A stretch of DNA of 64,000 bases, from IMG/VR virus record IMGVR_UViG_3300042923_000281, positions 62,001 to 126,000 of that record. One strand, 5' to 3'. A program made the position numbers and the translations under genes. Position 1 is the first letter of the stretch, and each line of letters begins with the position of its first letter. This document shows positions 48,996 to 51,250 of the stretch, one piece after another. The notes under the pieces were generated by a model that made no database searches, was not told the DNA's origin, and was given only the letters and a program-made list of their open reading frames with translations.

Positions 48996-49058
48996 GGTGT
49001 AAGGCCTTAGCTAGTTCTACACCATCTCAGCACTTTTTCTTTATTAACGGTGAACGTC

Positions 49059-49526
49059 ATGTCCCATCTGTACCACGGTTCTGGCTACAAACAACCGGAG
49101 CTTAAACCCGGCATCATGCACTCGGGTGAATTGCAGCGCTGGGACAAGACCGAATCCAACGAGTTCCTCTACGCCACCACGTTGATGGAAGAAGCCATTG
49201 CCCAAGGCTTAGCGTCGGTCATTGAGAAGCACTGGAACCTATCTCGTTACCAGTCCTCAGGCGACACCATTACGATCATCGTTGATGGGCCTCTCCCGTC
49301 GCTCAAGGAGCTTCAAGCCCTGACGGTGTATCTGTACAAGATCCACTGGGAGAAGTCCGTGTGGGTCCTCGTAGACAACCTGCACAATGGAATGTCCAAC
49401 GAGTACAAGACCAAGCAGGTCATCGGCGGGAAGATGATCGAAAGCTGTGAGCCTGTGGACCTGAGCAATTGGCTCAAGCACAAGAAGGTCGAGATCAAAG
49501 GCAAGACCGCAGCGATGCGTTGGTGA
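49059..49526 (+). CDS. Putative ADP-ribosyltransferase-fold (Arr-like) protein
   Basis: LYHGS...LKPG, LYATTLMEEA, YLYKI and EYKT resemble Arr YHGT/L.PG, IYFS.LME.A, YIY.V and SYRT. Confidence 0.45.
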   Translation: MSHLYHGSGYKQPELKPGIMHSGELQRWDKTESNEFLYATTLMEEAIAQGLASVIEKHWNLSRYQSSGDTITIIVDGPLPSLKELQALTVYLYKIHWEKSVWVLVDNLHNGMSNEYKTKQVIGGKMIESCEPVDLSNWLKHKKVEIKGKTAAMRW

Positions 49527-49580
49527 CAAAGAAAAAAAAAGAGGCTAGAGACAGGGGACCTTCGGGTCCCCTGTCTATTC
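49525..49580. terminator. Bidirectional terminator
   Basis: AGACAGGGGACC-TTCG-GGTCCCCTGTCT; long T tract ending CTTTG on minus. Confidence 0.8.
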
Positions 49581-49582
49581 CG

Positions 49583-49951
49583 TTACGACATCAGCCAGAT
49601 CGGCTTGATGTCACTGAGTGGATAGGTCTCACCGTCAACAACGATCTTGACGGGGTCCGTTGAATCGCCCGAGTAAGTGACACCTTGGATAGACCCCATC
49701 CCAGCGGGAGTCTTAACCAACATGCCAACCGACGGGTTCCACATGACGCCCTCGCCATCGAACTCCACGGTGCCGCTTTCAGGGTCTGGCGTGGCCATAC
49801 TCTTCTTGAGGCGCGCGATGATCTCGCTGTTCATGGAACGATGGTTCTCTTTCGCCACCTCCTGAATCTGTTCACGCATGCCATCAGGCAGACGTACAAC
49901 GAACTTATCAGCAGTACGGGAAGAGTAGATTGCTTGTTTCAAAGGACGCAT
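49583..49951 (-). CDS. amrZ: AmrZ/Arc-family ribbon-helix-helix regulator with non-AmrZ C-terminal domain
   Basis: [27 protein letters not shown]...[12 protein letters not shown] matches recalled Pseudomonas AmrZ N-terminus almost exactly. Confidence 0.85.
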
Positions 49952-50021
49952 GGTAAAGCCTCTTGCAAGTGGGACCCTAGAGTCCCGGGTTATGGTGGTG
50001 AAGTGCCATTATGGCGATGTA

Positions 50022-50792
50022 TCAACGGCCGGTCAAGAAGTTCTTCGCTTGTTCCTGAGTAAGGTTCACCAAACCCTTACCGTGGAAACGGCTAGCCGAA
50101 GTACTGATCCCGGTGAACTCGTCCCCGCCCAAGTGCAGCACGGCAGAGACATTCGACTTGGTCACGTGAAGCACACCAGCAACGCCATCAACGGAGCATT
50201 TGTGGTAGCCACGTGCCAACTCGGTATTGCGGGTCTCGAAGTCAACCGAAGACAACTCGATGACGTCAGGACGACGCAATTTGGCCACGAACGAACTCCA
50301 GAAGACTGGAGATTGATCGGGTTGTACTGGGTTCAACACCGCCCGAGGACGGGAGATGCTGACCACCTTGTCACCATTTCTATCCTTGACTTGTTCAAGG
50401 ATAGCTTCCGAGCTGGAAGCCATCATTTCTTCGCCAAACTGACGGATGCTCGGAATGGTCCCAGGCGCCTGTTCAAAGTCAAGACTGACGTTGCTCGTAG
50501 CAGTGCTGGGCGAACGGTAGGTCATGAAGTCGAATGGGCCGTCAGTGTCCTTTTTATCAGCCATGTCGGCTCCTTCAGCTTTTTCAATGACGGTTTCGGT
50601 GATGGCCACTTCCACTTTCTGGGTAGTGGTTTGTTGTACCCGAGCACGCAGGATGGCTTTACGCTCTTCCATTTGCTCAGGGGTGAGTTTGTCATCGCCT
50701 TTACGAGCCTTGACAGTCTTCCAGCCGAGACCGCCAACGATAGCAGCAGCAACAGCACCCACACCAACGATTACGGCAACTTGCTTTTCCAT
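50022..50792 (-). CDS. Hypothetical protein with N-terminal membrane anchor
   Basis: 256 aa; N-terminus resembles 324..881; AGGAGTTTCACC-ATG leader identical to 28..147. Confidence 0.8.
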   Translation of the reverse strand: MEKQVAVIVGVGAVAAAIVGGLGWKTVKARKGDDKLTPEQMEERKAILRARVQQTTTQKVEVAITETVIEKAEGADMADKKDTDGPFDFMTYRSPSTATSNVSLDFEQAPGTIPSIRQFGEEMMASSSEAILEQVKDRNGDKVVSISRPRAVLNPVQPDQSPVFWSSFVAKLRRPDVIELSSVDFETRNTELARGYHKCSVDGVAGVLHVTKSNVSAVLHLGGDEFTGISTSASRFHGKGLVNLTQEQAKNFLTGR

Positions 50793-50822: not shown

Positions 50823-51140
50823 TTATTGTACTTGACGCAGGCTAGTGGCTTCGATCATCTTGGCAGTCGCCTCGTCCATGATCTTCTCAATTGCCATGCG
50901 GTCTTTCATGCCAACGCTCTGAAGGATCAGATCGTCAGCTTCTTGCTCCAGCTCCAAGGCACGGGAGAGGTTGCTGGCACGCAGGGCAGCTTTCTCGATA
51001 CGCTTGGCGTTCTTCAAGGCTTCGTATTTACGCTTGCCTTGCCAGCTCCGATAGACTCGCTTGATGGCAGTCCAGATGGACACCTTCTCTTGAGTGGTCG
51101 AAACACGGGATTCTTCCAGTTGACGGATGAGTGCGAACAT
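50823..51140 (-). CDS. Hypothetical helical protein, probably early
   Basis: Start MFALIR, GGAG RBS, after promoter copy 5. Confidence 0.7.
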   Translation of the reverse strand: MFALIRQLEESRVSTTQEKVSIWTAIKRVYRSWQGKRKYEALKNAKRIEKAALRASNLSRALELEQEADDLILQSVGMKDRMAIEKIMDEATAKMIEATSLRQVQ

Positions 51141-51183
51141 GTTGATCTCCATTGATCAGGGTTAGGGTTATGTCAGCGTAATC

Positions 51184-51210
51184 ATGTATTGTTGAAAAGA
51201 ATTCGAATCG
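51184..51210 (-). promoter_or_regulatory. Bipartite phage promoter motif, copy 5
   Basis: Identical to copy 4 over 36 bp. Confidence 0.75.
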
Positions 51211-51213
51211 AAT

Positions 51214-51250
51214 CGGTATAAGGAGCCAGGGCAATTGCCCTGGCTCCATG
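51214..51250 (-). terminator. Terminator abutting promoter copy 5
   Basis: GGAGCCAGGGCA/TGCCCTGGCTCC stem; TTATACCG tail. Confidence 0.75.

What the first reader, a model, noticed from the sequence alone, without database searches (positions are those of the whole stretch)
49583..49951. Jumbo-phage AmrZ mimic with a swapped C-terminal domain
Seen: residues 1-48 read [48 protein letters not shown], followed by an unrelated beta-rich module (W.P..GM.V.T..G.G.I..V...V) that looks SH3/KOW-like. Known: this N-terminus is the Arc-type DNA-binding domain of Pseudomonas AmrZ (AlgZ). The AIYSS/PDG variant matches my recall of fluorescens/putida/syringae-group AmrZ. AmrZ controls alginate, motility and c-di-GMP genes, and AmrZ and phage homologues have been reported to repress type I-F CRISPR-Cas. 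Host AmrZ oligomerises through its helical C-terminus, which is absent here. Inference: a captured host regulator rebuilt as a dominant-negative or retargeted repressor. A GCCA-TTA-TGGC inverted repeat at 50005-50015 upstream could be an autoregulatory site.
Basis: partly seen in the sequence, partly recalled or inferred. Interest (0 to 1): 0.75.

Follow-up and report, generated by a model that had tools for sequence, protein, structure and literature searches.

The report
Jumbo-phage AmrZ-like repressor, barrel tail
A 277-kb Pseudomonas jumbo phage carries a small gene that joins a near-copy of the DNA-binding head of the host master regulator AmrZ to a small beta-barrel in place of the host's own tail; the gene is real, but it belongs to a phage protein family that is already catalogued and partly studied.

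Summary
The ORF at 49583-49951 (-) is real and reads as described. Residues 1-53 match P. aeruginosa AmrZ (PDB 3QOQ) at E 1.9e-20 and 76 bits, against 18-30 bits for Arc and Mnt. They are 85% identical to the AmrZ of fluorescens-group pseudomonads, and the DNA-contact residues are kept. Residues about 68-120 are predicted to form a five-stranded SH3/Tudor-like barrel. That barrel is unrelated to the host AmrZ tail and was found only fused to this kind of head.

The architecture is not new. phrog_38161 covers residues 9-118. SM1 gp115 shares both domains. PhiPA1019 Gp53 (126 aa, 2026 paper) looks like the SM1 gp115 orthologue, and it is an early repressor of host ftsZ, fleQ, pslA and amrZ.

Nucleotide identity to 80 bacterial amrZ genes is 67-77%, so there is no sign of recent capture. 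The proposed operator at 50005-50015 exists but is not conserved in relatives.

A homotetramer model scores 0.79 against 0.29 for the best control and puts barrel-barrel contacts between dimers. The host tail's SadB-binding motif is absent.

Best reading: a self-oligomerising AmrZ mimic aimed at host genes that probably escapes SadB/Lon turnover. It is a new member of a known kind, of moderate interest.

The parts
49583..49951 (-). CDS of the 122-aa AmrZ-like protein, stop codon included
49922..49951 (-). AmrZ-type extended N-terminus (residues 1-10, [10 protein letters not shown])
   Evidence: Aligned to AmrZ 3QOQ from residue 1 and conserved in bacterial AmrZ. Pryor 2012 reports that this extension contacts DNA without sequence specificity.
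49787..49921 (-). Ribbon-helix-helix (Arc-type) DNA-binding domain, residues 11-55. K16, V18 and R20 correspond to AmrZ K18, V20 and R22.
   Evidence: Pfam PF03869 E 5e-22; 3QOQ E 1.9e-20; invariant columns; contact residues named
49751..49786 (-). Variable linker, residues 56-67
   Evidence: pLDDT below 60; variable in length and sequence; dN/dS up to 0.79
49592..49750 (-). Orphan five-stranded SH3/Tudor-like beta-barrel, residues 68-120 (W71, P73, G76, V79, I88, P117 conserved)
   Evidence: AF2 pLDDT 80-85; weak fold matches that are all small barrels; homologous to the SM1 gp115 tail; found only fused to Arc domains
49959..49964 (-). Ribosome-binding site AAGAGG
   Evidence: Read from the sequence; GAGG conserved in relatives
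49971..49986 (-). Short 5'-leader hairpin GGGAC-N6-GTCCC
   Evidence: Conserved in L005, L008 and L010; replaced by GCGGCC-N4-GGCCGC in L006, which is a compensatory change
50008..50036 (-). Sigma-70-like promoter match TTGACC-17-CATAAT (10 of 12)
   Evidence: It is a consensus match only, about as many as shuffles give, and it is not conserved beyond the nearest relative.
50005..50015 (.).
   Evidence: Absent in L006, L008 and L010.
49532..49576 (-). Terminator-like hairpin (12-bp stem, 4-nt loop, 49549-49576), then a run of nine T starting 8 nt after the stem
   Evidence: The stem covaries in relatives. The terminator scan did not call it.
51181..51214 (-). Conserved phage promoter-like motif GATTCGATTCGAAT..CAACAATACATGAT at the head of the three-gene unit
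50823..51152 (-). First gene of the unit, 109 aa, no family match
   Evidence: conserved synteny
50022..50792 (-). Second gene of the unit, 256 aa, hydrophobic N-terminus, no family match
   Evidence: conserved synteny

Best explanation
The gene encodes a phage transcription factor that copies the DNA-reading head of the Pseudomonas global regulator AmrZ and carries its own oligomerisation module. The head keeps the extended N-terminus, the ribbon-helix-helix fold and the three base-contacting residues, so it should read the same GGC half-sites as host AmrZ. The host's C-terminal tail tetramerises AmrZ and carries the SadB-binding motif that sends AmrZ to the Lon protease. Here it is replaced by an unrelated small beta-barrel that probably joins two head dimers into a tetramer. 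The protein would therefore occupy AmrZ-type sites on the host chromosome (motility, exopolysaccharide, c-di-GMP and amrZ itself; possibly cell-division or cas genes). It would do so independently of host AmrZ levels and outside the host's post-translational control. It is transcribed as the last gene of a conserved three-gene unit. Shown here: gene, domains, conserved residues, absence of the host tail and its motif, family membership, synteny. Inferred: DNA specificity, host targets, tetramerisation through the barrel, escape from SadB/Lon, timing of expression.
For: AmrZ 3QOQ matches at E 1.9e-20 over residues 1-53, against at most 30 bits for Arc and Mnt. Identity to the AmrZ of fluorescens-group pseudomonads is 85% over residues 1-52. 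K16, V18 and R20 (AmrZ K18, V20, R22, the base contacts of Pryor 2012) are invariant in 28 and in 46 sequences. The head has dN/dS of 0.10-0.23. The homotetramer model gives ipSAE 0.79 against 0.29 for the best of 3 controls; that mark was reached by 20 of 30 solved homo-pairs and 1 of 23 single chains, and the calibration used two copies rather than four. In that model, barrel residues 66-75, 90-98, 101 and 111-119 touch between copies that share no head contact. The host motif QQNAL fits Q91/A94/L95, which SadB binding needs; it is present in all 108-110-aa bacterial rows and absent here. phrog_38161 covers residues 9-118. The SM1 gp115 tail is homologous (46 bits; hhalign 98%). PhiPA1019 Gp53 (126 aa, 94-kb phage, key residues R15, R21, M35, N36, which is exactly the SM1 gp115 numbering) is an early gene product that binds and represses the ftsZ, fleQ, pslA and amrZ promoters. 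Phage AmrZ homologues complement a host amrZ deletion and repress Csy expression. The nearest isolate, DT01, has phiKZ-type phage RNA polymerases. That makes host promoters likelier targets than phage promoters.
Against: There is no experiment on this protein. The identity of Gp53 with the SM1 gp115 type is inferred from length, residue numbering and genome size, not from its sequence. The complex model is only a prediction: part of its score comes from the well-known head dimer, and four copies lie outside the tool's calibration. Fold matches to the barrel are weak (Foldseek E above 0.005; VIA Z 6.0-6.5, below the level the tool calls specific), so the fold says nothing about function. K49 replaces the Glu of the His39-Glu51 salt bridge between dimers in the AmrZ-DNA crystal, so dimer-dimer geometry on DNA may differ from AmrZ. 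The host is not known directly. If the phage builds a nucleus-like shell, where the protein goes is unknown.
Confidence: 0.55

Rival explanations
1. Dominant-negative poison subunit. The phage head forms mixed ribbon-helix-helix dimers with host AmrZ. Because the mixed dimers lack one host tail, they cannot build proper tetramers, which would inactivate AmrZ.
For: The head is 85% identical to host AmrZ, with a nearly identical hydrophobic core. The host tail is needed for AmrZ activation and repression (Xu 2016, cited).
Against: The base-contacting residues are under strict conservation, which a pure poison subunit would not need. Phage homologues complement an amrZ deletion rather than copy its phenotype. 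Gp53 binds DNA itself, and its effects depend on its DNA-binding residues. The model predicts a self-contained tetramer.
Confidence: 0.15
2. Regulator of the phage's own genes, like Arc and Mnt in P22. It would repress its own unit or switch between temporal classes, with the palindrome at 50005-50015 as its operator.
For: Many phage ribbon-helix-helix proteins do this. The palindrome overlaps a -10-like hexamer. GCCANNNTGGC occurs 5 times in the window against 1.19 expected, with 3 of 100 shuffles reaching 5.
Against: The palindrome and the sigma-70-like match are absent in L006, L008 and L010, which keep the gene, the leader and the synteny. In the genome, 26 GCC-N5-GGC and 14 GGC-N5-GCC sites have A/T-rich spacers, with no link to the promoter motif. 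The nearest isolate carries phiKZ-type RNA polymerases. The head is conserved to match the host regulator.
Confidence: 0.15
3. The barrel is a partner-binding module rather than an oligomerisation module. It might be a Tudor-like RNA-polymerase-binding domain, as in UvrD/PcrA, CarD or Mfd, or a handle for another phage or host protein. That would turn the AmrZ head into a recruiter or an anti-activator.
For: Structural neighbours include the UvrD/PcrA Tudor domains and NusG/Spt5 KOW domains.
Against: These matches are no better than those to PsaE, R67 DHFR, CAP-Gly and chromatin Tudor domains, so they show a generic fold only. There is no sequence relationship to any of them. The self-association model passes its controls.
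Confidence: 0.1
4. Antitoxin-like or plasmid-partition-like ribbon-helix-helix protein, as some automatic names suggest ('plasmid stability protein', 'partition protein ATPase').
For: Weak sub-threshold Pfam matches to FitA-like and ParD-like antitoxins; names given by sources.
Against: Both Pfam matches are below their cut-offs. There is no toxin or ParA-like neighbour. The AmrZ match is far stronger.
Confidence: 0.03

Closest known systems
PhiPA1019 Gp53 and SM1 gp115 type (phrog_38161), from ~93-kb P. aeruginosa siphoviruses (Samunavirus)
   Same: Same two-domain build: an AmrZ-like head plus the W-x-P-x-x-G-M-L-V barrel. Identity is 37% over residues 5-118, the tail profile match is 46 bits and hhalign gives 98%. 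Gp53 is reported as an early, DNA-binding global repressor of host genes including amrZ, fleQ, pslA and ftsZ.
   Different: Different phage type (277-kb phiKZ-related myovirus against a 94-kb siphovirus) and probably a different host group. Gp53 lacks the MRPLKQA N-terminal extension that this protein shares with host AmrZ. The paper does not discuss the barrel. I could not compare the Gp53 sequence directly.
Pseudomonas AmrZ (AlgZ), PDB 3QOQ
   Same: Same extended N-terminus, ribbon-helix-helix fold and base-contact residues: 76 bits to P. aeruginosa AmrZ and 85% identity to fluorescens-group AmrZ.
   Different: The C-terminal tetramerisation tail and its SadB-binding QQNAL motif are replaced by an unrelated beta-barrel. 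K49 stands in place of the Glu51 of the dimer-dimer salt bridge. The gene is in a phage, not in the AlgU regulon.
Mobile AmrZ homologues of Borges et al. (PaBG, phi3, JBD68)
   Same: Phage-borne AmrZ-like heads with conserved DNA-contact residues. Three of them repress type I-F Csy expression. PaBG is also a jumbo phage.
   Different: phi3 gp09 (81 aa) has a short tail with no barrel. PaBG gp184 (138 aa) shows a W-C-P..G..V motif, but homology of its tail is not established (7 bits; hhalign probability 4.5%).
Noxifer gp106 ('Arc-like transcriptional regulator')
   Same: Jumbo phage of P. fluorescens SBW25. The head has the same N-terminal extension, with 51% identity over residues 1-104 and an 86-nt stretch at 92%. 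The tail is probably related (hhalign 73%, E 3e-5).
   Different: The protein is 146 aa with long insertions in the tail. W71 and P73 are not kept. The gene neighbourhood differs.
P22 Arc and Mnt repressors
   Same: Same ribbon-helix-helix superfamily. Mnt likewise adds a separate C-terminal tetramerisation domain to the head.
   Different: Only 18-22 bits. The Mnt tail is a coiled coil, not a barrel. They control phage genes rather than mimic a host regulator.

Membership tests
AmrZ/AlgZ of Pseudomonas | Arc-type ribbon-helix-helix domain | tested here: met
   PF03869 E 5e-22, residues 11-55; 3QOQ E 1.9e-20
AmrZ/AlgZ of Pseudomonas | Extended N-terminus [15 protein letters not shown] before the beta-strand | tested here: met
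   Aligned from residue 1 to 3QOQ and to bacterial AmrZ
AmrZ/AlgZ of Pseudomonas | Base-contacting residues K18, V20, R22 (P. aeruginosa numbering) | tested here: met
   K16, V18 and R20 are invariant; residues named in Pryor 2012
AmrZ/AlgZ of Pseudomonas | C-terminal tetramerisation domain carrying the conserved SadB-binding motif (Q91, A94, L95) | tested here: not met
   No similarity after residue 53; QQNAL is present in the bacterial rows only; motif
AmrZ/AlgZ of Pseudomonas | Chromosomal gene of the bacterium | tested here: not met
   The gene lies in a 276,978-bp virus record among capsid and other phage genes
AmrZ/AlgZ of Pseudomonas | Binds GGC half-sites and controls the alginate, motility and c-di-GMP regulon | not testable with these tools
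   Needs EMSA, DAP-seq and reporter assays
Phage two-domain AmrZ-like regulators (phrog_38161; SM1 gp115 / Gp53 type) | Full-length match to the family profile, including the tail | tested here: met
   phrog_38161 E 2.1e-25, residues 9-118 on profile positions 4-122 of 137
Phage two-domain AmrZ-like regulators (phrog_38161; SM1 gp115 / Gp53 type) | Tail homologous to that of SM1 gp115 | tested here: met
   Tail-only HMM 46 bits; hhalign 98%, E 2.8e-13
Phage two-domain AmrZ-like regulators (phrog_38161; SM1 gp115 / Gp53 type) | Early expression and direct repression of host promoters | not testable with these tools
   Reported for Gp53 only
SH3 / Tudor / KOW-like small beta-barrels (fold level) | Five-stranded small barrel | tested here: inconclusive
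   The AF2 model has five strands at pLDDT 80-85. All structural neighbours are such barrels, but at weak scores: Foldseek E at least 0.005 and VIA Z 6.0-6.5, which the tool calls non-specific.
SH3 / Tudor / KOW-like small beta-barrels (sequence families) | Match to a curated SH3, KOW or Tudor sequence family | tested here: not met
   No Pfam family on residues 56-122; profile A6 finds nothing significant in the PDB

The most novel reading that the evidence does not exclude
The orphan barrel is an orthogonal tetramerisation module. It would make a phage copy of AmrZ immune to the host's SadB/Lon off-switch and insulated from host AmrZ tetramers, giving a regulator mimic that the cell cannot degrade. 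Its DNA-reading head is exchanged between phage lineages as a separate recombination cassette: the patch at nt 30-183 differs at 34 positions, while the flanking sequence is nearly identical.
Probability: 0.3. Interest if true: 0.55.

Novelty: new member of a known kind. Interest (0 to 1): 0.35.

Why it matters
Phage copies of host master regulators are a known route of host takeover and of CRISPR-Cas repression in Pseudomonas. This locus adds a well-conserved example from the DT01/Noxifer-related jumbo phages of compost pseudomonads. It also draws attention to a part of the family that the published work has not discussed, the beta-barrel tail. Suppose the tail supplies tetramerisation while removing the SadB/Lon degradation handle. 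That would explain why phages keep the AmrZ head almost unchanged but never the AmrZ tail, and it would give a simple design rule for regulator mimicry. The system can be tested in the harmless laboratory strain P. fluorescens SBW25.

Tried and rejected
- A phmmer search with the tail alone against 1.84 billion representatives returned its own cluster, one other Arc-fused protein, and about 24 WD40 or MBG repeat proteins matched in many short stretches. I treat those as spurious repeat summation, because neither the predicted fold nor the profile searches support them.
- Searches restricted to the tail region and with a tail profile found no stand-alone homologue and none in another architecture. 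The only extra hit was a 57-aa fragment on a 402-bp contig.
- The ESM Atlas feature search gave scores of only 0.65-0.67. These are leads at most.
- Foldseek against PDB, BFVD and AFDB clusters gave no match below E 0.005.
- I tested whether the tail of PaBG gp184, a homologue that has been tested experimentally, is the same domain. The result was marginal (7 bits, hhalign 4.5%), so I do not claim it.
- I looked for a recent host donor of the head among 80 bacterial amrZ loci. The best identity was 77%, so recent capture is rejected.
- I looked for AmrZ-type sites linked to phage promoters and found no pattern.
- I tried to identify chimallin among two ~630-aa ORFs of the window by PDB sequence search and found no match. 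Whether the phage builds a nucleus is left open.
- The terminator scan did not call the hairpin after the gene, because the run of T starts 8 nt after the stem.

Full report
**Observation.** An AAGAGG ribosome-binding site sits 7 nt before the ATG. A 12-bp hairpin (49549-49576) with a run of nine T lies after the stop, and its stem covaries in relatives. The window belongs to a 276,978-bp virus record with direct terminal repeats. That record encodes a major head protein, a virion structural protein, a polymerase and ribonucleotide reductase. The major head protein is 82% identical to that of Pseudomonas phage pPa_SNUABM_DT01 and about 31-35% identical to phiKZ-related jumbo phages. 'Jumbo phage' is therefore correct.

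**The head.** Pfam Arc matches residues 11-55 at E 5e-22. Against all PDB sequences the best match is P. aeruginosa AmrZ (3QOQ) at E 1.9e-20 and 76 bits over residues 1-53. pArc scores 30 bits, Mnt 22 and Arc 18-19.

The 108-aa AmrZ proteins of fluorescens-group and related pseudomonads are 85% identical over residues 1-52 and carry the same AIYSS and PDG variants. P. aeruginosa has ATPTYSS and PEG. The three residues that read the GGC half-sites in the AmrZ-DNA crystal are K18, V20 and R22 (Pryor 2012). They correspond here to K16, V18 and R20 and are invariant in every aligned homologue. One difference stands out. The Glu51 that forms a salt bridge with His39 across the dimer-dimer interface in that crystal is Lys49 here.

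**No recent capture.** Over the 120-nt core of the head, nucleotide identity to 80 bacterial amrZ genes is 67-77%. Synonymous sites are therefore well diverged, and the head is maintained by selection (dN/dS 0.10-0.23).

**The tail.** After residue 53 there is no similarity to host AmrZ. An AlphaFold2 model built on 46 homologues gives five strands between residues 78 and 119 at pLDDT 80-85. As expected for an obligate dimer folded alone, the head is modelled poorly.

Every structural neighbour is a small SH3/Tudor/KOW-type barrel: PsaE, NdhS, YorP, UvrD/PcrA Tudor, R67 DHFR, chromatin Tudor and CAP-Gly domains. All match at weak scores, with Foldseek E at or above 0.005 and VIA Z of 6.0-6.5, which the tool calls non-specific.

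By sequence the tail is an orphan:
- No Pfam family matches it.
- The tail profile finds nothing in the PDB.
- In the large protein collections it turns up only fused to Arc-type heads.
- The WD40 and MBG repeat proteins returned by the single-sequence search look like summed short matches and are not supported by anything else.

W71, P73 and P117 are invariant, and G76, V79 and I88 nearly so. dN/dS for the tail is 0.17-0.40.

**The family is already known.** phrog_38161 ('Arc-like transcriptional regulator') matches residues 9-118, so it covers both domains. Full-length homologues of 120-135 aa lie on many contigs of 250-277 kb, several from compost metagenomes. In four of these relatives the neighbourhood is the same: a 105-109-aa gene, a 223-258-aa gene, this gene, then a convergent 155-aa gene.

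Among isolates, the ~93-kb P. aeruginosa siphoviruses (SM1, PaMx31, PA_L9 and others) encode a 126-aa protein that is 37% identical over residues 5-118. Its tail is clearly homologous (46 bits; hhalign 98%).

A paper of October 2026 describes Gp53 of phage PhiPA1019. The phage genome is 94,085 bp. Gp53 is a 126-aa ribbon-helix-helix protein and the most strongly induced early gene tested. It binds and represses the ftsZ, fleQ, pslA and amrZ promoters, blocks cell division, motility and biofilm formation, and does not fully overlap AmrZ in function. Its critical residues R15, R21, M35 and N36 fall exactly on R, R, M and N of SM1 gp115. From this I infer that Gp53 is the SM1 gp115 type, although I could not compare the sequences directly. 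That paper does not discuss the tail.

Earlier, Borges et al. reported 14 mobile AmrZ homologues in Pseudomonas. Five of the six they tested complemented an amrZ deletion. Three (PaBG, phi3, JBD68) lowered Csy expression. phi3 has a short tail with no barrel. For PaBG gp184 a W-C-P..G..V motif is suggestive, but homology of the tail is not established. The tail of Noxifer gp106 is probably related (hhalign 73%).

**What the tail may do.** A homotetramer prediction scored ipSAE 0.79 (runs 0.83, 0.79, 0.79) against 0.29 for the best of three controls. The tool's mark was reached by 20 of 30 solved homo-pairs and 1 of 23 single chains, with the caveats that my own alignment was used and that four copies lie outside its calibration. 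The scored copy touches one partner through the head (residues 14-52) and the tail. It touches a second partner through tail residues only (66-75, 90-98, 101, 111-119). This is what one expects if barrels bridge two head dimers, the role played in host AmrZ by its own tail (Pryor 2012; Xu 2016 as cited).

The host tail is also where SadB binds to deliver AmrZ to Lon, and this depends on Q91, A94 and L95. The spacing fits the QQNAL motif present in all 108-110-aa bacterial AmrZ rows of alignment A1, and nothing like it exists in the phage protein. The inference is that the phage keeps what reads DNA, replaces what oligomerises, and loses what lets the cell remove the regulator.

**Expression and the proposed operator.** A strongly conserved motif, GATTCGATTCGAAT..TTTCAACAATACATGAT, lies at 51181-51214 (-), just before the 109-aa gene. 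Its core occurs 20 times in the genome against 8.4 in shuffles, almost always before genes. It sits at the same place in four relatives. The AmrZ-like gene therefore looks like the third gene of a unit that ends at the hairpin after it.

The 70-nt spacer before the gene contains a sigma-70-like match, TTGACC-17-CATAAT. Both are present only in the nearest relative and are absent in three others. What is conserved there is CCATAACCC followed by a short hairpin with a compensatory change in one relative. GCC-N5-GGC sites with A/T-rich spacers occur 26 times in the genome without any link to promoters. The published AmrZ motif (an A/T-rich stretch, GCC, then an A/T-rich stretch) carries too little information to call a site. 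The autoregulation idea is therefore not supported, though it is not excluded for this one phage. The closest isolate, DT01, has phiKZ-type virion and non-virion RNA polymerases. If this phage does too, host-type promoters matter little for phage genes, and host promoters are the more natural targets of an AmrZ mimic.

**A mosaic gene.** Against the nearest relative (L005), the 300 nt upstream differ at one position and nt 184-369 of the gene at five. Nt 30-183, which is the head, differ at 34 positions, giving dS 0.56 against 0.05. The head has been replaced by recombination with a diverged allele. The closest head seen is that of L006, at 87.5% over the core. The head and the barrel thus have separate recent histories even between nearly identical genomes. 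DT01 lacks the gene altogether, so it is an accessory gene of this phage group.

**Verdict.** The locus is a new member of a known kind of phage regulator. The open and testable point is the role of the barrel.

Noticed in passing
window 51181-51214 (-); also 947 (-), 21536 (-), 33041 (+), 46726 (-): A conserved promoter-like motif, GATTCGATTCGAAT..TTTCAACAATACAT[G/T]AT, lies before genes. Its core occurs 20 times in the 277-kb genome against 8.4 in shuffles, 18 of them on the minus strand. It is conserved at the same positions in four related phages. Which polymerase reads it is unknown.
   Followed up: partly
window 49769-49922 (nt 30-183 of the gene): There is a recombination patch. Against the nearest relative (L005), 34 differences cluster in the head-coding part, against 5 in the rest of the gene and 1 in the 300 nt upstream (dS 0.56 against 0.05). 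The donor was not found.
   Followed up: partly
window 49971-49995 (-): The conserved leader element CCATAACCC is followed by a 5-bp hairpin GGGAC-N6-GTCCC. One relative has GCGGCC-N4-GGCCGC instead, a compensatory change. Related (C/A)TAACC motifs lie 12-35 nt before several other start codons (CTAACC: 21 of 58 occurrences precede an ORF, against 7-17% for control hexamers).
   Followed up: partly
window 49805-49807 (codon 49): Lys49 replaces the Glu (Glu51 of P. aeruginosa AmrZ) that pairs with His39 across the dimer-dimer interface in the AmrZ-DNA crystal. Some relatives keep Glu (ARLEKS or ARLERS) and others have Lys (ARLKKS).
   Followed up: no
whole genome against MW735835.1: The closest isolate by major head protein (82%) is P. 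aeruginosa phage pPa_SNUABM_DT01, which has no homologue of this gene. A compost jumbo phage 'similar to DT01' that infects P. fluorescens SBW25 (JPTI55) is described in a 2025 preprint and may belong to the same group as this genome.
   Followed up: partly
window 49050-49526 (+): The convergent 158-aa gene matches phrog_13483 (unknown function, E 6e-33). It keeps its place next to the AmrZ-like gene in all four relatives examined.
   Followed up: no
window 50022-50792 (-) and 50823-51152 (-): The two genes that share the unit are a 256-aa protein with a hydrophobic N-terminus and a 109-aa protein. Neither matches any Pfam or PHROG family, and both are syntenic in relatives.
   Followed up: no
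L094:1007-1621 (Pseudomonas phage HRDY3, 314 kb): Another jumbo phage fuses an AmrZ-like head to a different, longer tail (205 aa). That tail ends in a KOW-like stretch (GDPVIVKETGKLGIVDYV) and shows no detectable similarity to the barrel studied here. This suggests that heads of this kind have been joined to different tails more than once.
   Followed up: no
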